From positions 248,001 through 312,000 of the IMG/VR virus record IMGVR_UViG_3300025133_009608: 64,000 nt of DNA; one strand, given 5' to 3'. Each line of letters opens with the position of its first letter. Position 1 is the first letter of the stretch. This document shows positions 1 through 11,993 of the stretch, in pieces. The notes under the pieces were generated by a model. That model worked only from the letters and a program-made list of their open reading frames with translations, was not told where the DNA came from and made no database searches. A program made the translations under genes and the position numbers.

Positions 1-2047
1 GAACCTCTTCTTCCGATATATGCTCGGAATGTAGGACGTATGAGCTCACAGCTTTCGAGATAAGCACATCTGGCAGGTGATTGTCCTTATTCGCCCTCAT
101 AACCTTCTCAAATCCGTAACTTCGTTCGTCGATCATTATTGTTTCAATATTTTTAGCAAGAAACCTCAAAGCAATTGGGGATAGCGCAGACATCCCAAGT
201 ACGGAAAAGAAAACACTACTGAGATTGTACTCTTTACCTTTCTCTTCCATATTGCTCAAAACACCGTCGACCAAGTTATGCTCCTCTCGACCGGCTAGGA
301 CTGCTATAACTTCATCCGGAGACCATAGGGCTCCGGAGTAATAATTATCCATTATCTTTTCAGTCTCGGCAATCATCCAATAATCGTCTGAATCTTCATA
401 ATCTATTGGAGCAAAATACTCATCCAGCCAATTACGAATATATGGTGCATACTTCTGTACCGGAGGGGCGTTTTCCTTTCCCTTTATTTGATGCACATTT
501 CTGCCCGATGAGCCTCCCACCTCTATTGTCACGTGAGGCTCATTCTTGGCGTCTCTTAGAGAATAGATCTTAAGGCGCCCAATGATGATGTCATCGCAAT
601 AGCCCCCAACGCAGTGCCCCATGTTGCGACCCTCGGTTTCGACATCCTCGGGCGGGACAAGAACCATCGTGTATCCGTCCCCAAAATCATGATGAACATT
701 TTTTGTATTATATTCGCCAACTTCAATAGCCGGAACAAACTGCTCGTGCCACTTTTCGGCAGCCTGGATCATGGTCTGCGCGGAAATACTCTGCCATGGG
801 CCCATTCCCGGCTCAGGGAACGCATCCAGAGAGTTCACATAATCCTTAATTTGAATTAAAACCAGCCGTGGCGATGCCGCTTCATTCATATTAATGTTCG
901 CCAGCCACTTAATAAATGGCTTTCTATTCTTATGGGGCAACAGGTCATCACCGACGAGGGCAATGGCATTTAATGCCGATCTATTAAAAATTGGTCCATC
1001 CTCTGCCCTCTCGGAAAGGCTCTCAAAATAAGATCGAGGATCTTGCTCCGGGCTCTTTGCGATCTGCTTTTGCAATGACTTTATATTAATCTTTTTTAGA
1101 TACTCCTTATCTGCCTGTGCGGCAACCTTGTGCAGCTTTTCTATCTGGCCCATCCGGCCTCTTTCGCTTTCGCAAGCTCTAATTATTGATATATCTTTTG
1201 CCTCTTTCTTGAAGCCATTACTCCGAAGCCATTTCGACAGCCTATCTAGAGCATAATCAGGCTCATCTGGCCACTCATCCGGATCGAACTCAGACCACTG
1301 CTCATTTAGCGAAATATATTTAGATGGTATGTGACCATTGATAATTATTGTATCGTGATCAACTCCGTCATTAGCCGCCTCAGAATCAGAATACTCCACC
1401 CCCAGAGCCCAGGCTATGGAGTTTATCATTTTTTCTCTATAAATAGCCGGCTCCATCTCTATAACAGGGAGCTCTTCATTCTTTTGCTCATAATCTTTGC
1501 GCATCGCGCTTAAATCTATTTCAAATATATAGTCGCCATAAGAGTCAATTGCTTCTGGATTGAAGCTTGCGAAAATAGCACTTCCAACCCAGCGATTTGA
1601 AAGCCCCCTCGTCTTGCTCATTGGAGATAGCCCTTCTCGCATAATTGATTTAACATTCTCTCCTGGAGTTGCGTGATAGGCTATTCCGGCAAAGTAATCC
1701 TCCTGATAATTCTCCTCGTCAACGTAGTCTTCTGGGGAAATGTTATAAATCCAATGATTCGCGTCTTCGGAGCCGCTTATATTTTCACCGTCCATGTCAG
1801 CAACATGTTTGTCGCCCCGCCAGCCAAATGCATAAATTTTACTCAGGCCCTCTTTTTCGTTCGTAAGATCTATAACTTCCGTGGATCCACCGTCCTTATT
1901 TATAAGCTCAGAAAACCTACTCCAATTAAGCGCCTCATACCCCCCTATCACGTCCTCAAGGATCCCGAGCTCTTCCTCGGTCAAGCCTTCTGGTTTCATG
2001 GCAGCTTTAAATAGACTTTTAACTCTTAATCGCCTAAAGCTTCTCAT
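1..2047 (-). CDS. Polyvalent protein A (partial, runs off left edge): ADP-ribosyltransferase-fold domain + PcfJ-like domain
   Basis: Not in the supplied track. Translated by hand from ATG 2047 (ATGA overlap with the stop at 2044-2046) to base 1 with no stop (>680 aa). Starts MRSFRRLRVKSLFKAA. ART-like YHATPGENVKSIMREGLSP...SAIFAS...YIFEIDL. Internal RMGQIEKLHKVAA. PcfJ-like EGRNMGHCVGGY...IYSLRDAKNEPHVTIEV. Confidence 0.85.
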   Translation of the reverse strand, partial: MRSFRRLRVKSLFKAAMKPEGLTEEELGILEDVIGGYEALNWSRFSELINKDGGSTEVIDLTNEKEGLSKIYAFGWRGDKHVADMDGENISGSEDANHWIYNISPEDYVDEENYQEDYFAGIAYHATPGENVKSIMREGLSPMSKTRGLSNRWVGSAIFASFNPEAIDSYGDYIFEIDLSAMRKDYEQKNEELPVIEMEPAIYREKMINSIAWALGVEYSDSEAANDGVDHDTIIINGHIPSKYISLNEQWSEFDPDEWPDEPDYALDRLSKWLRSNGFKKEAKDISIIRACESERGRMGQIEKLHKVAAQADKEYLKKINIKSLQKQIAKSPEQDPRSYFESLSERAEDGPIFNRSALNAIALVGDDLLPHKNRKPFIKWLANINMNEAASPRLVLIQIKDYVNSLDAFPEPGMGPWQSISAQTMIQAAEKWHEQFVPAIEVGEYNTKNVHHDFGDGYTMVLVPPEDVETEGRNMGHCVGGYCDDIIIGRLKIYSLRDAKNEPHVTIEVGGSSGRNVHQIKGKENAPPVQKYAPYIRNWLDEYFAPIDYEDSDDYWMIAETEKIMDNYYSGALWSPDEVIAVLAGREEHNLVDGVLSNMEEKGKEYNLSSVFFSVLGMSALSPIALRFLAKNIETIMIDERSYGFEKVMRANKDNHLPDVLISKAVSSYVLHSEHISEEEV

Positions 2048-2484
2048 TGCCCCCTCCAGTACATTATCAGGGCAGGTACATGCGTCATTCCAAGCTCTAT
2101 GGCCGCTGCGAGTCGATGACGACCACTAACGAGCTTATAGCTTCTATTTCCCCATGAACTTTTCCATAATGTTACCGGAGGAAGCGGAACCCCACTCATC
2201 ATTTTATCTTTCAGCTCATTCGTCCAGATCCTTCCATATTCTTCTTGTTTTTTTGCCAAATTTATTGGAGCATTATAATCAAACTCTTCGACCGAGATAA
2301 TTTCAATTCCGTCGCCAAACAAATCCTCCTTCCTATCTTCGGGCCCCAAAAACTGCTGCACTTCCCCCTGGGCATCATGCATTTCCCTGTCTACAGATGA
2401 GTGGTCAGCTTCCCATGTGACTCGCTCTACGGCTTCGGCGATCTTAAGGAATCTTTTTAATTGCATTTTTCTGCAGCCCTTCAT
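2044..2484 (-). CDS. ParB/sulfiredoxin-like domain protein with N-terminal motif leader
   Basis: PPVTLW...YKLVSGRHRLAAAIELGMTHVPALI is a ParB/Srx G-x-H-R signature; leader RKMQLKRFLKIA. Confidence 0.75.
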   Translation of the reverse strand: MKGCRKMQLKRFLKIAEAVERVTWEADHSSVDREMHDAQGEVQQFLGPEDRKEDLFGDGIEIISVEEFDYNAPINLAKKQEEYGRIWTNELKDKMMSGVPLPPVTLWKSSWGNRSYKLVSGRHRLAAAIELGMTHVPALIMYWRGQ

Positions 2485-4958
2485 TCCAAGACATCCTTAT
2501 ATCCAGCGACCCATGAATCATCCTGCTCTATGTTTTGCATTTGATTTTTAGAAATCATTATCCAAATATACTTCTCTCCGGCATTGATTGCCGCAAAGGC
2601 CCTATGATTCCCATCTCGAATTTGGAATGTAAATTTGCCCAGATCTCCCCCTCCAGACTCCTCTGCTTTTTTCAACTGCAATTCTAACTCATCTTTGAGC
2701 TCGTTATATGAGCTTTTGATTATCTCATATTCGTCATCATATTCTGCATTGTTATTTAAGTATTCTTCTTTATCCTTCAAATATTCATCTAGATCTTCAT
2801 CTCCAGTTGTTAATGGCGCATGGCCGTAATCTTCCTGGTACTGTATCGACTCTTCAACCTCGCTGAGTCCGACTTTTGACATCTCGCCATATGGCGCGTA
2901 AAGAATCACCTTTTCTGGAGATGAATTTATCTTGTCGGCCAATTGAGAAATCTTCTCATCGTAAAATACATTCCCTTGGATTGGATAAACATAATGAGAA
3001 TCCGCCCTTACCATCTTTCCGGAGTCTCCAATCCAAATTACATTTTGCCCATGATATAGATTGTCAAATTCTGTTTCGCGCTCGATCTCATCTGAATCTA
3101 AATCTGGATAAAAATCTTCACGGTATTCCGCATATTGATCCGGCTGGCGCCAAAGCGGACCTTCGTCGCGGGGGACTGCGAGCTTGAGCAGCTGATTTAA
3201 TGTTTTTAATTCTGCATATCTTTTCGAATATGCCGTAGCGGCAGTTTCCCCCACGCCCGATCCAACAAGCAGTTCGAGAATCATATCGCTGCGGTCTGGA
3301 TTATCCCTCCTGAGCTCGCTATAAAAGTCAACCATTTTAGTGACCTTCTCGGGGGGTACATTATTTATCTTCGCTACCATATTTGTGAATTCTTCGTCCG
3401 AATAATTTGGCTTAGACAGATCGTAACCCACATCCGAAAGCCTCCTCTCAGATCCATATGGCTGATCTTTCCGGGGAACAACTTTCAGGCCTAATTTTAG
3501 AAATTCTTCTCGCGAATACCAAACCGGATCCTTGCCATACTCTTTGTGTCTTATTCTCTTTATTTGCCTCGGAGAAACAAGGCCTCTCAATAATGCTTGA
3601 GGCTCGCCTCCCTGGGTCCAGGTTAGAGACAGATGTGGCCTAAAGCTATCTGGAAACTTTTTACCTGCCATCTCGGATCTGGCTTTCACTTCGGCGTTAT
3701 GCCAATCGACAGAATGGGCATGCGGATCGCTTTTTCTTCCTATATTCCCAGAATAATCAACTCCATGAAGAAATTTGGCCCTTACATCAATCTCTAGAAT
3801 TATCTGCCCATAGCTTGCAAACTTATCCGCCGCCTCTTCGGTTGGGGCCACGAAAATACCCGCGTGTCTCGGGCCGCTATAAAGCCTTGGCATAATCTTA
3901 TTTGCGTCAAATCCATTAATCATTTCGTAGCAATCCGCCAGGGTTGTGCCATGGAAAACTGTTATGATATCATTTGGACGAACATTGTTGACATCCATTT
4001 CTTCTGATATTTTAAAAATTTGACCCAAACGAACCTTCCTGGAAGACTCTTTGTCGCCCAAAGACTCGACCATATAAGAGTGAAGGCCTCGGCGATCTTC
4101 TTTATCTTCCATTTTTTGCCGCGCATATTCTGATTTATACCTCCTGTCGAAGGGGCTCTCCTCGAACCCCTCTTCGACTCGGCTTAGCATATCGGAATGA
4201 GTGGACCTTCCCATGGATGAGTCCGGCCTATAGTCTACAAAGGAAACAAACCTTCTTCCTTCTAATTGGTTATTTCTAACAAAGGTGTCGATTATTGCCG
4301 ACAACGCGTTGATCGAAGAATCATAAGACTCTCCGCCAAATGGCAGTTTATAGCTTTTATCGTACTTCTCCTTCCACTTTTTCGCCGTCATTCCGGTCCG
4401 CAAATAATCATCTTTAAATAATCCCGGATTGTCATAGGCCGGGAAGTCATTCCACATATCCTCCGGCACAACTCCGAGCGGCTCACTTACCGTGACGAAA
4501 AATACAGAATCATCCAGTTCACCGGATTCGACCTGTTTTCTTATTTTATTATATGCCTTATAATATTCGCTAGTATTGCAGCGACCATGGCCCCAAGGCT
4601 TTGTTGACGCGCATGGAACCAGGGCGATTGTCTTGTATTCTTCGGGGATTTTATAGTTTCGCATTTTTTCATGCCACTCTATAATTTCCGGCTGAGATAG
4701 AAGCCCAACGGTTTCTCCGGGAGTATATGCAACAAGATCTGGGTTTAATCTGAAATCTTTATCGCCATAACCTTTGGTTTTTTTATCCAAAAGATGTTGG
4801 CGTAATTCTGGCCAATTCTCCTCAGATATGTATGGCTTTTTTCCTTCATTATCCGAGCCCAATTGGGCTCTTTCAAATTCTGATAGCTCAATTTTTGGGC
4901 GATCGGCAGAAGACTGCTTAAAGAGTCTTTTTAGATGTAATTTTCTAAAACTTTTCAT
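2481..4958 (-). CDS. Polyvalent protein C: DUF5591-like domain + ART-fold domain + ParB/Srx-like domain
   Basis: LVPCASTKPW...FVTVSEPLGVVPEDMWNDFPAYDNPGLF (DUF5591/ArcS-like); VFHGTT...GIFVAPT...ILEIDV (ART fold); IRDGNHRAFAAINAG (ParB). Modules are separated by copies of the repeated motif. Confidence 0.75.
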   Translation of the reverse strand: MKSFRKLHLKRLFKQSSADRPKIELSEFERAQLGSDNEGKKPYISEENWPELRQHLLDKKTKGYGDKDFRLNPDLVAYTPGETVGLLSQPEIIEWHEKMRNYKIPEEYKTIALVPCASTKPWGHGRCNTSEYYKAYNKIRKQVESGELDDSVFFVTVSEPLGVVPEDMWNDFPAYDNPGLFKDDYLRTGMTAKKWKEKYDKSYKLPFGGESYDSSINALSAIIDTFVRNNQLEGRRFVSFVDYRPDSSMGRSTHSDMLSRVEEGFEESPFDRRYKSEYARQKMEDKEDRRGLHSYMVESLGDKESSRKVRLGQIFKISEEMDVNNVRPNDIITVFHGTTLADCYEMINGFDANKIMPRLYSGPRHAGIFVAPTEEAADKFASYGQIILEIDVRAKFLHGVDYSGNIGRKSDPHAHSVDWHNAEVKARSEMAGKKFPDSFRPHLSLTWTQGGEPQALLRGLVSPRQIKRIRHKEYGKDPVWYSREEFLKLGLKVVPRKDQPYGSERRLSDVGYDLSKPNYSDEEFTNMVAKINNVPPEKVTKMVDFYSELRRDNPDRSDMILELLVGSGVGETAATAYSKRYAELKTLNQLLKLAVPRDEGPLWRQPDQYAEYREDFYPDLDSDEIERETEFDNLYHGQNVIWIGDSGKMVRADSHYVYPIQGNVFYDEKISQLADKINSSPEKVILYAPYGEMSKVGLSEVEESIQYQEDYGHAPLTTGDEDLDEYLKDKEEYLNNNAEYDDEYEIIKSSYNELKDELELQLKKAEESGGGDLGKFTFQIRDGNHRAFAAINAGEKYIWIMISKNQMQNIEQDDSWVAGYKDVLE

Positions 4959-5314
4959 TGTTTCTCAATCTTAATTACCATTACATTATTAGGATCGAAT
5001 ATTACCCAATTTCCATCCAAATAAATGGAATCAAACCCTTGCTCTTGAATTTGCTGCAGGTAAAGCTTGTCATATTCGCCCCATCCGGCGGTTCTGCCAA
5101 CTGATAGTTCGACTTCCATTATATATTTTGATGATATAGCCCCAGATTCACCATTTAATATTTTATCTTTATCTTCGTGGAACCACATAACGCCCTGAGC
5201 TCCCATGCTGGGATCGAAAACATGAATAGGAACATTGCTACCATGATAGGCAGTAACTACTTCCTTGTCGGCTGCGATTTTATGCAAACTTGTTATTTTG
5301 CTAAAACGATTCAC
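4955..5314 (-). CDS. Small ADP-ribosyltransferase-fold protein (ART-PolyVal-like) with motif leader
   Basis: GTG start; leader RFSKITSLHKIA; AYHGSN...F...QGVMWFHED...QGFDSIYL...WVIFDPNNV pattern. Confidence 0.7.
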   Translation of the reverse strand: MNRFSKITSLHKIAADKEVVTAYHGSNVPIHVFDPSMGAQGVMWFHEDKDKILNGESGAISSKYIMEVELSVGRTAGWGEYDKLYLQQIQEQGFDSIYLDGNWVIFDPNNVMVIKIEKQ

Positions 5315-5328
5315 TTTAACCTAGTCCT

Positions 5329-5357
5329 TACGCTTGAAGAGCATTGATTATCAATAG
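5329..5357 (-). promoter_or_regulatory. Candidate phage promoter/regulatory elements upstream of ORF 4955-5314 (CTATTGATAATCAA and TTCAAGCGTA)
   Basis: CTATTGATAATCAA (5344-5357) matches 34083-34096 at 13/14; TTCAAGCGTA (5329-5338) is identical to 11977-11986. Both lie in short intergenic gaps. Confidence 0.45.
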
Positions 5358-5363
5358 AAATTT

Positions 5364-7187
5364 TCACTCAACGGAAACGGATTTTGCCAAATTACGAGGC
5401 ATATCGACCGAACAGCCCCTCTCTATTGCCAAATAGTACGAAAATAATTGACATGGAACCAAAAACATCAGTGGATTCAAAACTTTATTCGAGCAAGTTG
5501 GAATTTCAATGTAGTCATCAACAATATTTCGTAGCTCATCAGAGCATTTATCTTCGAATATCCCGATCACCGTTCCTTTCCTTGCCTTTATCTCTCTAAT
5601 ATTTGAAATCATTTTCTCCTCAGATGCATCAGCGGAAACCAGCGCTAATGTTGGCATTTCTTCCGAAATCAAGGCCAGAGGCCCGTGCTTCAACTCAGCA
5701 GCGGAGTATCCTTCGGCGTGAATATAGCTTATTTCTTTTATTTTCAATGCAGCCTCTTTTGCGACCACTTCTAATGGCCCTCGGCCGATCGTTAGCATGT
5801 TATTATATTTTGCATATTTTTTGGCCAACACCTTGAGTTTGTCGGCAGACTCAAGCGCTCCAAGCATAGCGCCCGGAAGACTTTTAAACTCAGACAGCAA
5901 AGACTCGTAACTTAGTCGAGCAAAATCTCTTTTTGCCCCGATCATTGCAGCCATAGCTAGCATCGCTGTTATTTGGTTCATAACAGCCTTGGTCGATGCC
6001 ACAGACACCTCTTTTCCTGCACGAATATATATTCCTGCGTCGACCATCTTTGAAATTGTAGAATTTGGAACATTTACAATTCCAACATTTAATGCCCCAT
6101 GGTTCTTAAATGCCTTTATGCATCCAATTGTATCCGCTGTTTCTCCGGACTGAGAAACTGACACCAAAACCGTTCCGCCCGTAACAACTGCGTTGTAATA
6201 TTTCAATTCACCGGCAGGAATCGCTCTGGTTCTTATTCTTGCGATTGTTTCCATCGCCATCGCTCCGATTTGCGCAGCATAAAATGCCGATCCGCATCCG
6301 GTAAATATTATCTCTTCTGCTTCTAGCAGATTATTAACAACAGAATCAATCCCGCCAATTCTAATTTCGTCATCGCAAACTCTCCCCGTAATAGCCGTCC
6401 TCAAGTAGTCCGGCTGTTCGAATATTTCTTTTTCCAAAAAATGAGCATAATCACCCAAATGATATTGTGACTCTACAAGTTCTACTTTTTCAAACTTCGC
6501 GTCTACTCCCGCCCCGTCTAAAGCGTGCATCTTTACCGCCCCACCTCGGGCGATTATCGCCAAACGGTTGTCTGCCATTGTAACTACATTATCTGCACCG
6601 GACGGCAGAGATCCGAAATCAGAGGATATAAATATATTATCATCCGAATCCTTAGCGATGCAGGCGGGGGAGCCTAGTCTGGCGACAAAAAGCCTATCCT
6701 TATGATCCAAATGTGTGAATACCATTGCATATGCTCCACGTATCGATCTAAGGGCGGCAATTATGGCATCTTTTATATCTAAATTTGCAGAATAAAACTG
6801 AATTAAGTTTGGAACTATTTCGCTATCCGTATCCGAGGCAAACTTAAACCCCTCCTTTTCGAGGAAGCTCTTTAGCTCGGCATAATTTTCAATAATTCCA
6901 TTATGTACCAAGGCAATTTTTTTATCATTTGAAAAATGAGGATGAGAATTAACTATACTTGGGACTCCGTGTGTTGCCCATCTATTATGCCCGAATGATA
7001 ATCCAAATGATTCGGCCTCTTCGGCTAATAGCTCCGGGTGACCTACGCACTTTTCGATCAAAAACTCACTATTTACTACCGAGACGATTCCAGCGGAATC
7101 ATATCCGCGGTAAGCAAGCCGCTCCAGCCCCGATCTCACTATGTCATATGAATTTTCATCTCCAATATATCCAAATATTCCACACAT
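5364..7187 (-). CDS. glmS: Glutamine--fructose-6-phosphate aminotransferase (isomerizing)
   Basis: N-terminal MCGIFGY, YRGYDSAG, GHNRWATHG, HNGIIEN, SDTDSE, SQSGETADT, ELKHGPLAL and C-terminal PRNLAKSVSVE; 607 aa. Confidence 0.97.
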   Translation of the reverse strand: MCGIFGYIGDENSYDIVRSGLERLAYRGYDSAGIVSVVNSEFLIEKCVGHPELLAEEAESFGLSFGHNRWATHGVPSIVNSHPHFSNDKKIALVHNGIIENYAELKSFLEKEGFKFASDTDSEIVPNLIQFYSANLDIKDAIIAALRSIRGAYAMVFTHLDHKDRLFVARLGSPACIAKDSDDNIFISSDFGSLPSGADNVVTMADNRLAIIARGGAVKMHALDGAGVDAKFEKVELVESQYHLGDYAHFLEKEIFEQPDYLRTAITGRVCDDEIRIGGIDSVVNNLLEAEEIIFTGCGSAFYAAQIGAMAMETIARIRTRAIPAGELKYYNAVVTGGTVLVSVSQSGETADTIGCIKAFKNHGALNVGIVNVPNSTISKMVDAGIYIRAGKEVSVASTKAVMNQITAMLAMAAMIGAKRDFARLSYESLLSEFKSLPGAMLGALESADKLKVLAKKYAKYNNMLTIGRGPLEVVAKEAALKIKEISYIHAEGYSAAELKHGPLALISEEMPTLALVSADASEEKMISNIREIKARKGTVIGIFEDKCSDELRNIVDDYIEIPTCSNKVLNPLMFLVPCQLFSYYLAIERGCSVDMPRNLAKSVSVE

Positions 7188-7222
7188 GCTTTTTCCCTCC
7201 GGGTTTCGTAATATCCCTTTAA

Positions 7223-7230
7223 ATTAATAG
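7223..7230 (-). promoter_or_regulatory. CTATTAAT motif upstream of glmS (candidate late-promoter core)
   Basis: Same core as the intergenic motifs at 5344-5357 and 34083-34096; GGAGG-like RBS precedes the glmS ATG. Confidence 0.35.
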
Positions 7231-7261
7231 CTAATTTTTAAATATATTGCGGAGGCTAAAA

Positions 7262-8020
7262 ATGAAACCAGTTAAATGCTATGACGATCTAGACTACATT
7301 CGAGGAAAGGACGCTAGACATATTCGGATACTACTAGAGCACGAACAGGTCAAAACGAGATTGAAGGACAACAATGTGGAAAATACAGTTGTAATTTTCG
7401 GGTCAGCAAGGACGCTTCCGCCATTAGACTTGACGTCAAAAGCTGAAGATGCTCATTTTGCAAAAGATAAAGAATTTAAAAAACAACTTTCCCAGTCGAG
7501 GTACTACGAAGAGTGCATGAAGTTGTCTGGAGACCTGATTGGGTGGTCTGATAAAAACAAGACAAATATGCATATATGCTCGGGAGGCGGCCCTGGAATT
7601 ATGGAGGCCGCCAATAAGGGTGCATTTTTGGCCAATCCAAATAAAAGTATCGGATATGGAATATCCCTCCCATTTGAGGCAGAAAATAACGAATACATCA
7701 CAGAAAATTTAAGCTTCGAGTTTCATTACTTCTTTATTCGCAAATTTTGGCTCACATATCATGCAAGAGCCGTTGTGGCCATGCCCGGTGGATTTGGAAC
7801 TATGGACGAAATATTCGAGATTCTAACACTAGTACAGTGCCAGAAAATGCCAAAAGTTCCAATAGTCCTATATGGTAAAGATTATTGGAATTCTATTTTG
7901 AACCTTCAGGCATTTGCGGACCACGGAGTGATCTCGGAAGAAGATCTGAATTTATTTAAAATATGCGACACCCCGGAAGAGGCTCTGGAGTACTTGACGA
8001 AAAGCATGGAGCTGACGTAA
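7262..8020 (+). CDS. LOG-family (TIGR00730-like) nucleotide phosphoribohydrolase
   Basis: VVIFGSART, SGGGPGIMEAANKGA, FHYFFIRKFWL, PGGFGTMDE. GGAGG RBS at 7251-7255 supports ATG 7262 rather than the track's 7247. Only convincing plus-strand gene. Confidence 0.9.
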   Translation: MKPVKCYDDLDYIRGKDARHIRILLEHEQVKTRLKDNNVENTVVIFGSARTLPPLDLTSKAEDAHFAKDKEFKKQLSQSRYYEECMKLSGDLIGWSDKNKTNMHICSGGGPGIMEAANKGAFLANPNKSIGYGISLPFEAENNEYITENLSFEFHYFFIRKFWLTYHARAVVAMPGGFGTMDEIFEILTLVQCQKMPKVPIVLYGKDYWNSILNLQAFADHGVISEEDLNLFKICDTPEEALEYLTKSMELT

Positions 8021-8024
8021 ATAT

Positions 8025-8387
8025 TTACTCTCCCTCTTTCGTCTCCGGAAGTTTATTATCCTTGGTGCCGTCAATATTGTATGTTATTTGCTCTCCATCT
8101 TCAAAGGTAATAATGGTGCCATTTATTAAATGCGAAGTAATATGAATGCTTACGAAGTCGTTCATTGAGTCGAATACCGCGATCGATCCGCGAGGTGAGG
8201 GCGAGAGCCAGTGAAGCATTACCTGTCCTGTTGCCAATAACGCCCCCTCGACTATGACTCCCGTTCCTGATATCCCCGTTTCGTCATTTTGGCGGCAGAC
8301 CGTAAAGGTTCTTATGCCCCTAGGAGCAAGTCTCGCTGGAGGGCGCGGCTTCAGATCCTCGTCCTCTGCTTTTTTCTCATCTTCCAT
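8025..8387 (-). CDS. Conserved phage hypothetical protein
   Basis: RTFTVCRQNDETGISGTGVIVEG...G...LHWLS...GSIAVFDS...IH pattern recalled from small phage hypothetical proteins; ATG directly follows the TAA of the upstream ORF. Confidence 0.65.
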   Translation of the reverse strand: MEDEKKAEDEDLKPRPPARLAPRGIRTFTVCRQNDETGISGTGVIVEGALLATGQVMLHWLSPSPRGSIAVFDSMNDFVSIHITSHLINGTIITFEDGEQITYNIDGTKDNKLPETKEGE

Positions 8388-8567
8388 TTAGGCCTCTGCC
8401 GCAGGAGACATGCTGTGTACCGCAAGGGTCTCTATCGCATCCTCTTCTGCTGCCTTTATTTCATCCATCATTTCCCAAACGCTAGCGTTTTCGTCCATAA
8501 GTCTTTCGTTTTCTTTTTCTAGTTCTTTTATCTTGGCGTACGGCCTAAATATGTCTCTAAATTTCAT
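8388..8567 (-). CDS. Small (59-aa) coiled-coil hypothetical protein
   Basis: Below the track length cutoff. MKFRDIFRPYAKIKELEKENERLMDENASVWEMMDEIKAAEEDAIETLAVHSMSPAAEA. ATGA overlap with the upstream stop, abuts the downstream ATG and fills the gap exactly. Confidence 0.7.
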   Translation of the reverse strand: MKFRDIFRPYAKIKELEKENERLMDENASVWEMMDEIKAAEEDAIETLAVHSMSPAAEA

Positions 8568-11500
8568 GATTCGCCCCTTGTGTGTTGTTGCTCTAAAGGA
8601 ATGTTTTTTATATCATTTGTCGTTATATGCTTTAAATTTAACGACCCAGAAGAAAGTCTCTCCCAAGCTCCCTGTGCATGGATATTCATTAATACATAAT
8701 AAAGATAATTAGAATCTAGCACGCTTTTTGCCGCCGGCCTTACGGCAACTCCTATGTGCTGCGGCTCGAAAGACTTGACCACTGACCCCACTGACTCTTT
8801 CGATCCCTTCCTTATTATCCAAAAATCTGCATCTTCAAAGTTTGTTTTAATCTCGCAGAAACCTCCGAGCTTGAGCGGGCTGGCAAGCTTATGGAGCTTT
8901 GCAATTTTATAAGATCTTCCATCCTCAATTATATTTTCGTTAGGAAAAGCTCCCCACTCAAACTTCTCCTCATCATCGCCGACTGGACTATAAAGATCGT
9001 TGTAATCTCCAGAGGATACCATGGCATCAAAGGTTCTATCTCCATCTAAATATGCTTGAAAAATTCTATGATTGCCATCTTCAACAATAAGTTGCTCGTG
9101 TTTGGTGTCCCAAAATAATTCCGGGAGCCCTTCCGTCATCGATGGCCTTCCGAGGCGAAGATGCCTCAAAGTCGAATCGCCCTGACCCTTAGACATAGTG
9201 ATTTTTTCAAAAGGAATGCCCCTAACCAGGGTGTATCCGCTTTCGCTATCTTCTATTTCTCCAAGCAGATCCTCCGAGAATGAGAAGGGCATTTTTGAGA
9301 ATGGAAGCTCCAATTGACGGCCGCTCTGCTTGCGAGCCTCGTTGTCATCGGCCAAATCCTCATCTTCCTCATATTCTATCTCTTCGAACTGTCCGTATCC
9401 TAATTCGTTTTTTGTCTCAAAGTATATTGAGGCCTCTTCCGGCGTTGCCTCGTAATAATCTGACAGCCCCTTGTAGCTCATTTCATCGTTCCGATAAATA
9501 TCGCTAGCGTTCGCCAGAATATAATATGAATCAATAAATTTTGCCGGGATTCTGCCGCGATATCCATATACGCCCATCTCCCTAGACACCGCCATCGCCG
9601 TGCCCGGCATTGCCTCACCTTGGGTGCCGGAGCTGCGAGTTTTGTTGGAAATATAGTCATAAACATTGGTCTGTTCCGACTTGTTATTTATATCATAATC
9701 CGGAACAAGTTTGGCCTCATCCTGCAGAGAAAACTCAACGATCATGGGGTCGTCGCCAACCTTATCTGCTGTATGTACCGCGTGCGCTCGAGCTTCATCA
9801 AATCTGGATGTAAAAAATATTAAATCAGAATGGGCAATATCTTTATAATTCGTCTCTGACACTCCCGGCCGAAGTCCCGTCTTTAAAATATCTCCCAAAT
9901 ACTTGGTTGACGTACCGTGAAACATGGTCTTTGCAACTCTCCCGCGTATTTCGTGCTTTGATGCTTCAAACTCATCATCTCCGCCGTAATAAACAACGTT
10001 GTTTAGCCCTAGCTCTTTGAATACTTTTTTCACTAAGATTGAAGACTTCGGGTCCAGGGAAAACCCCCCTCTTCTTTGCAAGTGAAGATCAGAGCGTGGA
10101 GGGTTGGTCCAGGGGGCGTCATGGATCGACCCAACAAGAACGTCAGAGCGCCCCTCATCGTCGATTGCCGTGTATAGATCCTCTAAGATCTCCCAGTCTT
10201 TATACTTCATCCCTATTTCGGTATTTATTTCATCTATAATGTCATCAGGTATGGGCTCATCATCATCTTCGAATCTCCATATTTTGGAGCCAAACGCAAC
10301 AATCGAAGATCCGCTGCCGTAGATATGCATAGCAATTTTATGTAAGCTTGCAATCTTGTCCATTCTAGCGCTGATATCAAAGTGAGCTAGAGCCAATAGA
10401 ACCCCCGGATGAACATCAAGACTCGAAACCTCGTCTAAATCGACAATCTTCCAATCTGTATGCTCCCAGTTTAGCGTCGGGCTTATCGAGCCCATTACGT
10501 CCGCAGTAACTTCCAGCAGAAACGTCGTAAAAGTAAAGCTGCCATCTTTAAAAACATAATTATCTACAAACCTTCCAGATGGTATGCCTCCGATCTCCTC
10601 TTCGGCCTCATGGATTGCAGATTCTTTCGGATCCCTCCCGCCCCCGTTAGAGTCCCTCGGAATGGCCCCTCCAGAAATGCCCCACAATCCCGGGTTCTCA
10701 ACGTATGGTGAGCGCTTGAGTAATAATATTCTTTCGCCGTCCGTTATCATTATGCCCGAGGCTGCTGAGCCCCAGTACTTCCCGACAAAGCCTTCGTCCC
10801 GGTAGTCCGTGGCTACTTTATTTAATTTCGCGATCTTTCTTTGACGCTTGGACATCTCCTCGTCATATCCATCGGACTGGCCAATTACCTCTCCGCCTGG
10901 AAGCACCGCCCTCCAGGTGCTGCCCACGGTCTTCTCGTGCTCAGCTATATAATCGACATAATCATTTCCACCATAATGAAATGTTAATTCATAATTTGGA
11001 TACCCAGAATCCTCTACCACATATAGTATTCTGTTCTTTCCCGAGAATCCAATTGGCATCATTGAGCGAAGATTTTGATGACGCCAATCGTTATCACTTT
11101 TTATATTTATAAGCTCTGGAGCGGCGGCGCTTAGGGCATCGACCGAGACTCTTAGCTTTTCCCATGAGCCCTTAAAGGCATTATTTCTAGTGGTTTCGAT
11201 TAAGTCTTCATAATCTTGAATCTTATCTTCGACCCCCTCTACCATTTGGTTGTTGCGCCTTATGATTCCTTCAATTATTTTATTATAACGTTTAATGTTC
11301 TCATCTTTATAACGATGAGCCTCGACCTCCATGAGGTGATTCGCATAAGAAATGAAGACATCTTTGAATAAACCATAGAATCGCTCTCTCTGTCTTTTTA
11401 TCCTATTCTTAAATCCAGGATGGTTTTCGATTAAAATATTTCCTAGGTCGTCTATCTTATCCGAATAGTCCCAAAGTCTAATTTCATCATATATCTTATT

Positions 11501-11950
11501 GTAAAAATCTGGATTAAGATTTCCCGAGTATCCCCAGCCACTTCTAGCGCCGTGGAAGACAAGGCTGCCCTCAAACGTGCGAAAGAATTGGTCAGCAGAA
11601 GACCCAATAATCCTGGATATATTCGGCAGTACAAAATCTTCGTCAACCATAGCATCTGGGCTGCGAGTTTCATAAGTTATGCCAATCATTAATTTATTAT
11701 CTCCGCGGGTCGTGGCGGTGCTCGATGCGGAAGATGCGGATCCAAAATTATCGGTCATATAGACGCCACCATGAGTCTTTATGGAGCTTGTGCCGGCCCC
11801 GCGTCCAAACTCATCGTTATAAACGGGGGGCTTATTTGGCAATAATCCTTCTTTTAGGATCCCCCTTAAATTATTTGAGGTTGTTCCGTGCCAAAATAGC
11901 TTTCTTTCGGCAATCTTGTGCAGCCTCGATATTTGCCCCGAGCGATTCAC
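8564..11950 (-). CDS. Polyvalent protein E: ART-fold + Nudix + second ART-fold + ParB/Srx + HsdS-TRD-like domain
   Basis: FWHGTT...ILKEGLLP...GGVYMT (ART); WGISGGAIP...ESAIHEAEEEIG (Nudix box); MFHGTST...ILKTGLRP...LIFFT (ART); VEDGNHRIFQA (ParB); YLYYVLM...SSGSLNLKHITTNDIKNIPL (HsdS TRD-like). Four motif copies; GGAG RBS before GTG. Confidence 0.85.
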   Translation of the reverse strand: MNRSGQISRLHKIAERKLFWHGTTSNNLRGILKEGLLPNKPPVYNDEFGRGAGTSSIKTHGGVYMTDNFGSASSASSTATTRGDNKLMIGITYETRSPDAMVDEDFVLPNISRIIGSSADQFFRTFEGSLVFHGARSGWGYSGNLNPDFYNKIYDEIRLWDYSDKIDDLGNILIENHPGFKNRIKRQRERFYGLFKDVFISYANHLMEVEAHRYKDENIKRYNKIIEGIIRRNNQMVEGVEDKIQDYEDLIETTRNNAFKGSWEKLRVSVDALSAAAPELINIKSDNDWRHQNLRSMMPIGFSGKNRILYVVEDSGYPNYELTFHYGGNDYVDYIAEHEKTVGSTWRAVLPGGEVIGQSDGYDEEMSKRQRKIAKLNKVATDYRDEGFVGKYWGSAASGIMITDGERILLLKRSPYVENPGLWGISGGAIPRDSNGGGRDPKESAIHEAEEEIGGIPSGRFVDNYVFKDGSFTFTTFLLEVTADVMGSISPTLNWEHTDWKIVDLDEVSSLDVHPGVLLALAHFDISARMDKIASLHKIAMHIYGSGSSIVAFGSKIWRFEDDDEPIPDDIIDEINTEIGMKYKDWEILEDLYTAIDDEGRSDVLVGSIHDAPWTNPPRSDLHLQRRGGFSLDPKSSILVKKVFKELGLNNVVYYGGDDEFEASKHEIRGRVAKTMFHGTSTKYLGDILKTGLRPGVSETNYKDIAHSDLIFFTSRFDEARAHAVHTADKVGDDPMIVEFSLQDEAKLVPDYDINNKSEQTNVYDYISNKTRSSGTQGEAMPGTAMAVSREMGVYGYRGRIPAKFIDSYYILANASDIYRNDEMSYKGLSDYYEATPEEASIYFETKNELGYGQFEEIEYEEDEDLADDNEARKQSGRQLELPFSKMPFSFSEDLLGEIEDSESGYTLVRGIPFEKITMSKGQGDSTLRHLRLGRPSMTEGLPELFWDTKHEQLIVEDGNHRIFQAYLDGDRTFDAMVSSGDYNDLYSPVGDDEEKFEWGAFPNENIIEDGRSYKIAKLHKLASPLKLGGFCEIKTNFEDADFWIIRKGSKESVGSVVKSFEPQHIGVAVRPAAKSVLDSNYLYYVLMNIHAQGAWERLSSGSLNLKHITTNDIKNIPLEQQHTRGES

Positions 11951-11976: not shown

Positions 11977-11993
11977 TACGCTTGAATATTAGC
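11977..11993 (-). promoter_or_regulatory. Candidate regulatory element GCTAATATTCAAGCGTA upstream of polyvalent gene E
   Basis: TTCAAGCGTA is shared with 5329-5338; GCTAATAT is shared with the intergenic 34075-34082. Confidence 0.4.

What the first reader, a model, noticed from the sequence alone, without database searches (positions are those of the whole stretch)
1121..11944. A 12-aa motif (RxxKIxxLHKIA) leads all five effector genes and most internal modules: candidate capsid-loading/protease-cleavage code
Seen in sequence: 11 copies align in one register. RRLRVKSLFKAA (2000-2035), RMGQIEKLHKVA (1121-1156), RKMQLKRFLKIA (2437-2472), RKLHLKRLFKQS (4911-4946), RKVRLGQIFKIS (4005-4040), ELKTLNQLLKLA (3177-3212), RFSKITSLHKIA (5273-5308), RSGQISRLHKIA (11909-11944), RQRKIAKLNKVA (10811-10846), RMDKIASLHKIA (10331-10366), RSYKIAKLHKLA (8882-8917). 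Five copies begin at residue 3-5 of five different genes. The other six lie at boundaries in front of a new module (PcfJ region, ART, ParB, Nudix, ART+ParB, TRD-like). K10 is invariant, R1 is present in 10/11, and positions 5, 8 and 11 are mostly hydrophobic, i.e. a basic amphipathic helix. I did not notice it in the glycan or baseplate genes. Established knowledge: T4 internal proteins carry a short N-terminal capsid-targeting sequence removed by the gp21 prohead protease, and phiKZ-like ejection proteins are cut by the head protease at short motifs. Inference: this phage builds polyproteins from single-domain cassettes that each keep a packaging/processing tag, so the head protease could release separate enzymes for injection. 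I do not recall this motif grammar being described.
Basis: partly seen in the sequence, partly recalled or inferred. Interest (0 to 1): 0.92.

Follow-up and report, generated by a model that had tools for sequence, protein, structure and literature searches.

The report
Reused leader peptide joining phage effectors
An uncultured 317-kb marine jumbo phage puts the same 12-residue helical peptide at the start of five enzyme genes and at the joints between enzyme modules inside them. Related phages swap, fuse and delete modules exactly at this peptide, so it looks like a portable address tag, possibly for loading the enzymes into the virus head, although that function is untested.

Summary
All 11 copies sit at the stated coordinates on the minus strand. 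Ten are far beyond chance. The eleventh is weak by sequence but is a positional homologue of clearer copies in relatives. Codons differ between copies, so the peptide is conserved, not a DNA repeat. In about 107 kb of this genome that I could read, the motif occurs only in these five genes.

Comparative data extend the finding. Homologues of three cargo families (a small ART, Nudix, a ParB-like protein) keep the domain but carry other short leaders. One, MKxLLxEWRxFLxE, is found on 21 genes, always N-terminal, and ends in a T4-like [LIMV]-x-E. Relatives permute modules, and BLAST breakpoints fall on the motif. One sister phage fused two genes by an in-frame crossover inside two motif copies. 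AlphaFold places the motif as a detached, low-confidence segment outside the folded domains.

The tag and junction role is well supported. The capsid-targeting and protease-cleavage reading is a reasonable analogy to the T4 capsid targeting sequence, but it is untested. The head genes were not reached, no conserved Glu-type cleavage site follows the motif, and no virion data exist.

Verdict: a new variant of known kinds (a CTS-like leader on polyvalent proteins). Interest 0.68.

The parts
1..2047 (-). G1, a polyvalent effector gene. It is 1,122 aa in full and its 3' part lies left of the window. Layout: leader, ART-like region, motif, PcfJ region, C-terminal repeats.
   Evidence: full length from L003; PcfJ, E about 2e-9.
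2044..2484 (-). G2, 146 aa: leader plus a ParB-like domain.
   Evidence: ParB_N weak; PHROG ParB-like; homologues.
2481..4958 (-). G3, 825 aa. Layout: leader, DUF5591, motif, ART module, motif, ParB-like module.
   Evidence: module map.
4955..5314 (-). G4, 119 aa with a GTG start: leader plus a minimal PARP-like ART fold.
8564..11950 (-). G5, 1,128 aa with a GTG start. Layout: leader, PARP-like, motif, Nudix, motif, ART2 plus ParB-like, motif, C-terminal module of unknown family.
11909..11944 (-). Motif copy RSGQISRLHKIA, G5 residues 3-14, N-terminal.
   Evidence: leave-one-out score 25.6.
10811..10846 (-). Motif copy RQRKIAKLNKVA, G5 369-380, in front of Nudix.
   Evidence: Predicted helix is model H6-22 = G5 360-376, low-confidence, overlapping the N-terminal two-thirds of the motif; the stretch between it and the confidently predicted Nudix core is also low-confidence.
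10331..10366 (-). Motif copy RMDKIASLHKIA, G5 529-540, in front of ART2.
   Evidence: The PHROG 11974 match starts at residue 530.
8882..8917 (-). Motif copy RSYKIAKLHKLA, G5 1012-1023, in front of the last module.
   Evidence: In P0030 the same upstream end plus the motif is followed by a different module.
5273..5308 (-). Motif copy RFSKITSLHKIA, G4 3-14, N-terminal.
   Evidence: pLDDT below 50 in the model. Replaced by an MK-type leader in 22 homologues.
4911..4946 (-). Motif copy RKLHLKRLFKQS, G3 5-16, N-terminal.
4005..4040 (-). Motif copy RKVRLGQIFKIS, G3 307-318, in front of the ART module. It is one partner of the in-frame crossover seen in sister phage L044.
3177..3212 (-). Degenerate motif copy ELKTLNQLLKLA, G3 583-594, in front of the ParB-like module.
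   Evidence: Weak by score. Accepted as a positional homologue of copies in P0035 and P0031.
2437..2472 (-). Motif copy RKMQLKRFLKIA, G2 5-16, N-terminal.
   Evidence: Kept in P0047, which is 75% identical.
2000..2035 (-). Motif copy RRLRVKSLFKAA, G1 5-16, N-terminal. It is the other partner of the L044 crossover.
1121..1156 (-). Motif copy RMGQIEKLHKVA, G1 298-309, in front of the PcfJ region.

Best explanation
The motif has the consensus R-x-x-K-[IL]-[AN]-K-[LFI]-[LHF]-K-[IL]-[AS]. I read it as a portable, selected peptide tag of about 12 residues, probably an amphipathic helix, that marks the start of each effector cassette in a clade of uncultured marine jumbo phages.

Shown:
- It is conserved as a peptide, not as DNA.
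- It is restricted to the effector genes.
- It lies outside the folded domains.
- It precedes unrelated folds.
- It is exchangeable with other leader types on homologous cargo in other phages.
- Cassettes are fused, lost and permuted at it, at least once by an in-frame crossover inside two copies.

Inferred:
- All tagged cassettes are recognised by one common partner. That partner is most probably the prohead core or packaging apparatus, so the tag would work like the T4 capsid targeting sequence and send anti-defence and host-takeover enzymes (ARTs, Nudix, ParB-like, PcfJ) into the capsid for injection.
- Internal copies either add binding valency or are cut by a maturation protease to release single enzymes. 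Cutting would make fused and split gene arrangements equivalent and would explain the free shuffling.

My estimates: tag and junction role about 0.9; capsid targeting about 0.45; cleavage at every copy about 0.3.
For: Statistics and exclusivity. The motif is found only in G1-G5 within about 107 kb read from this genome, and it is absent from tail sheath, tube, fibre, baseplate and glycan genes.

Peptide-level conservation with free codon choice.

Leader swapping on conserved domains:
- G4 family: 22 homologues at 52-63% identity to G4 in the alignment carry MKxLLTEWRxFL in place of the motif.
- Nudix.
- G2 family.

In relatives, 3 to 5 adjacent unrelated genes share one leader. The MK leader is always at the ORF start (23 of 23 occurrences), and across 21 distinct genes it has [LIMV] at position 12 in 19 and Glu at position 14 in 18.

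The window-type core also sits at residues 13-24 of three adjacent genes in a different 296-kb phage, L019.

Module permutation with HSP ends on motifs: P0030-P0032, P0036 and P0037.

Sister phages: in L043, G3 ends 24 aa after motif 3. In L044, G3 1-318 is joined to G1 residue 17 onward with a hybrid motif, and the DNA crossover lies in the shared TTTAAA.

AlphaFold: G4 residues 1-14 have pLDDT below 50 while the domain folds as PARP-like. The two motifs flanking Nudix overlap or lie in low-confidence predicted helices outside a core with pLDDT about 90; the upstream helix (G5 360-376) covers only part of motif 369-380.

Precedent: the T4 CTS and Alt, and phiKZ/SPN3US propeptides. Phage polyvalent proteins are predicted to be capsid-packaged.
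Against: - There is no direct evidence that these proteins are in virions. No cultured relative exists.
- The head module, with its protease, scaffold and capsid protein, was not found in the roughly 107 kb read. A matching site in head proteins could therefore not be sought.
- No position after residue 12 is conserved. Glu at position 13 or 14 is enriched only within one homologous module family, unlike T4 or phiKZ sites.
- Some junctions lack the motif: G5 about 855-878, and the Nudix of P0031/P0032.
- In P0030-P0032 the first copy is at residue 57, behind a real 56-aa N-terminus that has a good ribosome-binding site. An N-terminal position is therefore not required.
- L019 carries two leader types in one genome.
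- The genes sit among metabolic and anti-defence genes (glmS, LOG, Acb5), which does not by itself point to virion proteins.
Confidence: 0.45

Rival explanations
1. It is a junction or linker element only. The peptide would be a neutral-to-useful spacer helix that insulates neighbouring domains. Its coding sequence would offer microhomology for in-frame recombination, so it marks where cassettes can be joined but addresses nothing.
For: The crossover in L044 lies inside two motif copies at a 6-nt identity. HSP ends fall on motifs. The motif is detached from the domains in the models.
Against: All five genes carry it at their extreme N-terminus, where there is nothing to link. At least 8 further genes in relatives do the same. 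K10 is invariant across 33 distinct copies despite free codon choice. Homologous stand-alone cargo carries other N-terminal leaders at the same place.
Confidence: 0.2
2. It is a docking helix for a partner other than the capsid. The tag would gather the separate enzymes on a common hub in the infected cell, such as a phage scaffold or chaperone, the membrane, or a compartment-import or secretion step, without encapsidation.
For: It has a basic amphipathic pattern. The genes are co-located and translationally coupled. The genes lie among non-structural accessory genes. Two leader types occur in one genome, which could mean two destinations. Tubulin/TubZ genes occur in these phages.
Against: No candidate hub was identified. 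A 12-residue helix is short for self-association. The nearest experimentally understood case of many unrelated anti-defence proteins sharing only a short leader is capsid targeting in T4.
Confidence: 0.2
3. It is a pro-sequence removed by a protease that is not the head protease. Candidates are the Peptidase_M50 (site-2 protease family) genes encoded next to leader-bearing genes in two related phages, or a host protease. Cleavage would activate or release the enzymes after synthesis.
For: M50 genes lie within 1-3 kb of leader genes in L019 and L022.
Against: No M50 gene is present in the window, in the roughly 107 kb read from this genome, or in L027-L031. The two M50 genes are not similar to each other by tblastn. 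The association rests on two loci.
Confidence: 0.05
4. The internal copies are inert fossils of former gene starts. Only the N-terminal copies would function, and the internal ones would persist because the fusions are recent.
For: A Met lies 2-4 residues upstream of some internal copies: MSK-R in G5, MMKK-R in P0030-P0032, and RM in two copies. Fusion and fission events between sister phages are recent.
Against: Internal copies stay recognisable between proteins whose modules are only 40-68% identical, for example RMDKIASLHKIA against RFDKIAKLLKFA with a module identity of 41%. In the 87%-identical orthologue the internal copies (34 of 36 residues identical) are better conserved than the N-terminal one (7 of 12).
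Confidence: 0.1

Closest known systems
Capsid targeting sequence (CTS) of phage T4 internal proteins IPI-III and Alt, removed by prohead protease gp21
   Same: A short leader of 10-14 residues is the only thing shared by otherwise unrelated anti-defence or host-modifying proteins. ADP-ribosyltransferases are among the cargo. The leader is interchangeable on cargo. The MK-type leader of related phages even ends in [LIMV]-x-E, like gp21 sites.
   Different: There is no sequence similarity. The window motif has no conserved Glu after it. It is reiterated inside long proteins at module joints, whereas the T4 CTS is strictly N-terminal. This phage is not T4-like; its nearest cultured baseplate homologue is in Bacillus phage G. 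Packaging and cleavage are untested.
Polyvalent proteins of phages and conjugative elements (Iyer, Burroughs, Anand, de Souza, Aravind 2017; PMC5512222)
   Same: These are multi-enzyme polypeptides that combine ART, ParB-like and Nudix domains, are encoded by phages, are predicted to be injected, and show extensive domain shuffling. The Pfam family ART-PolyVal hits relatives weakly.
   Different: That paper describes no conserved inter-domain peptide; the word 'linker' occurs 0 times. It proposes MuF or portal fusions and embedded zincin-like peptidases for packaging and processing. None of these domains is detectable in G1-G5.
Propeptides of phiKZ / 201phi2-1 / SPN3US head and ejection proteins, cut at several S/A/G-x-E sites by the prohead protease
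   Same: These are jumbo phages with many packaged proteins. Short cleavage motifs are repeated within one polypeptide.
   Different: Those sites are 3-residue motifs inside long propeptides that are discarded. They are not a 12-residue helix in front of each functional domain, and no A-x-E rule holds here.
Junction motifs of polymorphic toxin systems: the short conserved peptides that separate the constant part of CdiA or Rhs proteins from their swappable C-terminal modules (from my own knowledge of that literature)
   Same: A short conserved peptide marks the point where modules are exchanged by recombination. In Rhs proteins the junction is also a self-cleavage site.
   Different: Those systems have one junction per protein and are bacterial secretion systems. 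Here there are up to four junctions per protein, plus N-terminal copies on single-domain genes of a phage.
N-terminal packaging determinant of phage P1 DarB and the Dar system (from my own knowledge; P1 papers are listed)
   Same: A large anti-restriction protein is loaded into the capsid through an N-terminal region.
   Different: It is a single protein-specific region that depends on helper proteins. It is not a motif shared by many cargo proteins.

Membership tests
Polyvalent proteins (Iyer et al. 2017) | Two or more distinct effector or enzymatic domains in one polypeptide | tested here: met
   G5 has PARP plus NUDIX above the Pfam cut-offs. G1 has PcfJ and G3 has DUF5591. The further ART and ParB-like modules are supported only by weak hits and by module homology.
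Polyvalent proteins (Iyer et al. 2017) | Encoded by a phage or conjugative element | tested here: met
   The genes lie on a 316,664-bp IMG/VR contig that also carries baseplate, sheath and tube genes.
Polyvalent proteins (Iyer et al. 2017) | Packaging or processing domain in the protein or its neighbourhood (MuF, portal fusion, zincin-like MPTase) | tested here: not met
   No such Pfam or PHROG hit in G1-G5 or their neighbours.
T4-type capsid targeting sequence | Short leader at the extreme N-terminus, shared by unrelated proteins | tested here: met
   Five of five effector genes in the window, and more in relatives. Six further copies are internal, which the T4 CTS is not.
T4-type capsid targeting sequence | Leader ends in a prohead-protease site ([LI]-x-E in T4) | tested here: not met
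   Only 3 of 11 window copies have Glu at position 13, and no conserved residue follows position 12. The MK-type leader of related phages does meet this feature, with Glu in 18 of 21.
T4-type capsid targeting sequence | The phage encodes a gp21-like prohead protease and scaffolding core | tested here: inconclusive
   The head module was not found in the roughly 107 kb of the genome that could be fetched.
T4-type capsid targeting sequence | The leader is sufficient for encapsidation and is removed in the mature virion | not testable with these tools
   This needs virion proteomics or reporter fusions. No cultured relative exists.
phiKZ-like ejection-protein propeptides | Cleavage motif S/A/G-x-E repeated in the propeptide | tested here: not met
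   [AS]12-x-E14 occurs only in copies that precede one homologous ART module.

The most novel reading that the evidence does not exclude
A reiterated capsid-targeting and cleavage code. Each effector cassette of these jumbo phages would carry its own 12-residue address helix. Polyproteins would be loaded through several tags and cut apart in the prohead. Fused, split and permuted gene arrangements would then be functionally equivalent, and cassettes could be exchanged between phages by in-frame recombination inside the tag. Different phage lineages would use different tag dialects (the window type, MKxLLxEWRxFLxE, MKITKSQLxxIIKEE, and an RVAxR[YF] type), each matched to its own head machinery.
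Probability: 0.3. Interest if true: 0.85.

Novelty: new variant of a known kind. Interest (0 to 1): 0.68.

Why it matters
If the tag is a loading signal, it gives three things.
- A sequence handle for finding the injected proteins of uncultured jumbo phages. These are mostly anti-defence enzymes that have no other common feature.
- An explanation for why polyvalent proteins shuffle so freely.
- A short peptide that could be tested for packaging foreign proteins into large capsids, as was done with the T4 CTS.

Even if the function is different, the finding shows that domain shuffling in phage effector genes can run through a conserved, selected junction peptide. One recombination event was caught between sister genomes. 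It also shows that several tag dialects exist on homologous cargo in related marine phages.

Tried and rejected
- DNA repeat or RNA element: rejected. Codons differ and no repeat family covers the copies.
- Widespread exact motif: the back-translated pattern for R..KI..LHKIA found only this phage plus 8 chance-like hits in IMG/VR.
- Cultured relatives: none for the region or for G4. The Zeta-like cargo has pelagiphage homologues, but they lack the leader.
- KVP40.0290, the stand-alone homologue of the ART2 module, starts with a different helix-like leader that ends in L-N-E. I found only two loosely similar N-termini in 57 kb of KVP40, so this stays a lead.
- Internal translation starts: only one internal copy (G1 298) has a Shine-Dalgarno-like sequence, so this is not a general explanation.
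- Sigma-70 promoter and terminator scan: uninformative.
- Peptidase_M50 link: seen in two loci only.
- Search for head genes: I walked upstream to the contig end. I then jumped to the contig start through the overlap of about 700 bp between the two contig ends and walked on to 26.7 kb. This found sheath, tube, fibre-like and lysis-like genes but no recognisable capsid protein, portal, scaffold or protease. One look-up failed because the ORF ran off the locus.
- The 'TRD-like' label for the G5 C-terminus: no Pfam support.

Full report
**What the window is.** The window is positions 248,001-312,000 of a 316,664-bp IMG/VR contig, IMGVR_UViG_3300025133_009608 (JGI Ga0208299_1000006). The same sequence is present on several other marine assemblies. 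It is a myovirus-type jumbo phage:
- gp6-like and gp25-like baseplate proteins lie in the window;
- tail sheath and tube lie at the start of the contig;
- the nearest cultured baseplate homologue is in Bacillus phage G;
- no cultured phage matches the region at the DNA level.

**The observation.** All 11 peptides translate as written from the minus strand. The carrier genes are:
- G1: starts at 2047 and runs off the left end of the window; 1,122 aa in full;
- G2: 2044-2484;
- G3: 2481-4958;
- G4: 4955-5314;
- G5: 8564-11950.

G4, G3, G2 and G1 overlap by ATGA. The N-terminal copies start at residue 3 (G4 and G5, both 'MN-R' after a GTG start) or at residue 5 (G1, G2 and G3, 'M[KR][SG][FC]-R'). 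The internal copies lie at G1 298-309, G3 307-318 and 583-594, and G5 369-380, 529-540 and 1012-1023.

The statistics are clear.
- A motif regex hits 10 times in the 3,340 residues of G1-G5 (G1 at full length) and never in 17,906 residues of the 30 other window proteins. Shuffled effector proteins give a mean of 0.0005 hits.
- With leave-one-out PSSMs, ten copies beat all 17,576 null positions. ELKTLNQLLKLA does not.
- In a six-frame scan the 11 copies score 19.7-32.2, and the next hit (15.5) lies in a non-coding frame.

The copies use different synonymous codons, and no DNA repeat family covers them. What is conserved is the peptide.

No further copy exists in 10 kb downstream of G1 or in contig positions 1-26,723, which hold sheath, tube, fibre-like and lysis-like genes. 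In the roughly 107 kb I could read, the motif is confined to these five genes.

**What the genes are.**
- G5 has PARP-like and Nudix domains above the Pfam cut-offs, plus a second ART module that is homologous to the stand-alone protein KVP40.0290.
- G1 has a PcfJ region and G3 a DUF5591 region. Further ART-like and ParB-like modules are supported only weakly.
- G4 folds as a minimal PARP-like domain.
- The cluster also holds glmS, a LOG-family gene and an Acb5-family gene.

By composition these are polyvalent proteins in the sense of Iyer et al. 2017 (PMC5512222). They lack the MuF, portal or zincin-peptidase domains that paper links to packaging and processing.

**Leaders are swapped on conserved cargo.**
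- G4 family. G4 has 26 metagenomic homologues, and the 22 placed in the alignment are 52-63% identical to it over a well-conserved domain. Their first 14 or so residues read MKxLLTEWRxFLKEE instead of the motif.
- Shared leaders on neighbouring genes. In locus L022 three adjacent genes all begin MKKLLTEWRKFL: one of unknown function, the G4 homologue, and a stand-alone Nudix. Two more genes begin MK[IL]TK[ST]QLR.IIKE. Loci L027, L028, L030 and L031 show three to five adjacent genes each with the MK leader.
- Properties of the MK leader. All 23 occurrences found start at the first Met of the ORF. Across the 21 distinct genes, position 12 is L/I/M/V in 19 and position 14 is Glu in 18. That is the form of a T4 gp21 site (established knowledge; T4 CTS and processing are reviewed in PMC9026906).
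- Nudix. The stand-alone L022 Nudix aligns from its first residue to G5 376-516, so it starts where G5 has its internal motif.
- G2 family. A 75%-identical homologue keeps the motif (RKLQLKRLLKIA). More distant homologues keep the domain from about residue 20 but carry other short amphipathic N-termini.
- A second phage with the window-type core. In L019, a different 296-kb phage, the core [LFIV][HFL]K[IL][AS] sits at residues 13-24 of three adjacent genes, one of them a PARP/ART-PolyVal protein.

**Cassettes are rearranged at the motif.**
- P0029 is 87% identical to G5 and keeps all four copies.
- P0030, P0031 and P0032 are positional orthologues of G5, downstream of the same phosphomannomutase gene. 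They contain the same modules in another order, and almost every BLAST segment starts or ends on a motif.
- The N-terminal PARP module of G5 is internal in P0031 and is still preceded by a leader (RSNRLLELEKIA).
- The sequence 'FPNENIIEDG + motif' is followed by an unrelated module in G5 but by the G3-type ART module in P0030.
- P0036, P0037 and P0039 show further combinations, again with the leader at the N-terminus or at the joint.

Two sister phages with the same gene order make the point directly.
- In L043, G3 stops 24 residues after its third motif, and the ParB-like module is absent.
- In L044, one gene consists of G3 1-318 joined to G1 from residue 17 onward. It carries the hybrid motif RLSRLNQIFK-FAMKPEGLT. 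The DNA alignment places the crossover in the TTTAAA shared by codons 9-10 of the two copies.

Pooling 33 distinct copies gives the consensus R1 (24 of 33), K4, [IL]5, [AN]6, K7, [LFI]8, [LHF]9, K10 (33 of 33), [IL]11, [AS]12 (33 of 33). No conserved position follows.

**Structure.**
- In an AlphaFold model of G4 built on its family alignment, residues 1-14 have pLDDT below 50 and no contact with the folded domain.
- In a model of G5 355-545, the Nudix core has pLDDT of about 90.
- The predicted flanking helices are G5 360-376 and 531-544. They cover most of motif 369-380 and nearly all of 529-540.
- Both helices have low confidence (pLDDT 40-51). The upstream helix and the core are separated by a further low-confidence stretch.

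The tag therefore lies outside the folded domains it precedes.

**Interpretation.** The well-supported part is that this is a portable peptide under selection. It marks cassette starts and serves as the point of in-frame joining.

The functional part is inference. The nearest understood case is T4. [quoted passage not shown] The MK leader on homologous cargo fits that model closely.

For the window-type motif, several pieces are missing.
- I could not find the head genes.
- No Glu-type site or any other fixed residue follows the motif.
- Some joints lack it.
- In P0030-P0032 the first copy lies behind a genuine 56-residue N-terminus.

Cleavage at each copy would neatly explain why fused and split arrangements are interchangeable, but nothing here shows it.

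The rivals are a pure junction element, a docking helix for a non-capsid partner, a pro-sequence for another protease (M50 genes lie beside leader genes in only two loci), and fossil gene starts. They are weighed in their own sections.

**Novelty.** I found no description of this motif or of the MK leader. The kinds are known: CTS-like leaders and polyvalent proteins. What appears new is the reiteration of a leader at internal module joints, its use as a recombination point, and the existence of several dialects on homologous cargo.

Noticed in passing
L022:68-1331, L027:10342-11500, L028:8704-10066, L030:74-2722, L031:8695-17911: A second leader, MKxLLxEWRxFLxE, heads 21 distinct genes in related marine phages. 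These include a Zeta-toxin-like kinase, a Nudix and an 1,868-aa polyvalent protein. It is always at the ORF start and ends in [LIMV]-x-E.
   Followed up: partly
L022:2662-3498, L027:1247-2040, L031:16910; protein P0056: A third leader family, MK[IL]TK[ST]QL[RA]xII[KR]EE, sits on small genes in the same phages that use the MK leader.
   Followed up: no
L005:5241-10942: A high-GC 297-kb phage has a Nudix 55% identical to that of G5. It shows a repeated RVAxR[YF]-type peptide 7 times in its polyvalent gene cluster, and one copy lies exactly where G5 has its 529-540 motif. Its significance is uncertain in an R/A/V-rich proteome.
   Followed up: partly
L019:6592-7299 (-), L022:1823-2626: Peptidase_M50 (site-2 protease family) genes lie next to leader-bearing genes in two different phages. 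None is found in the sequence read from the window phage.
   Followed up: partly
window 8028-8387 (-), 7247-8020 (+), 5364-7187 (-): An Acb5-family gene (PF26761), a LOG/lysine-decarboxylase-family gene and glmS sit between G5 and G4. The Acb5-like gene is also next to G4 homologues in L028 and L031.
   Followed up: no
window 5329-5338 and 11977-11986 (-): G4 and G5 share TTCAAGCGTA about 15-30 nt upstream of an identical GTGAATCG start (15 nt in G4, 27 nt in G5). This may be a common promoter or 5' element. The 10-mer is not over-represented in the window.
   Followed up: partly
L003:22400-23269 (G1 residues about 830-1122, left of the window): The C-terminal third of G1 is built of repeats of about 35 residues with a recurring P-x-x-FF signature. 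It has no Pfam match.
   Followed up: no
L045:1-703 and L046:13165-13867 (contig start and end): The two ends of the 316,664-bp contig overlap over about 700 bp at about 89% identity with small indels. This suggests a closed, circularly permuted or terminally redundant genome assembled across strain variants.
   Followed up: partly
L048:1683-10004: Two adjacent giant proteins (1,588 and 1,183 aa) upstream of the sheath share the same N-terminus (MSKSKYP..LD.S.EIP). They look like paralogous fibre-like proteins.
   Followed up: no
L001:2995-4113 (KVP40.0290): The stand-alone KVP40 homologue of the G5 ART2 module begins MKNLKSFMEELQSLNE. This is a helix-like leader ending in L-N-E at the position of the window motif. 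It may be a T4-type CTS, which was not established here.
   Followed up: partly
window 29494-63983 (-): A run of very large structural-region proteins (1,517, 3,472, 2,554, 817 and at least 1,143 aa; the last is 1,619 aa in the JGI gene call) has no PHROG match. They lie around the gp6-like and gp25-like baseplate genes.
   Followed up: no
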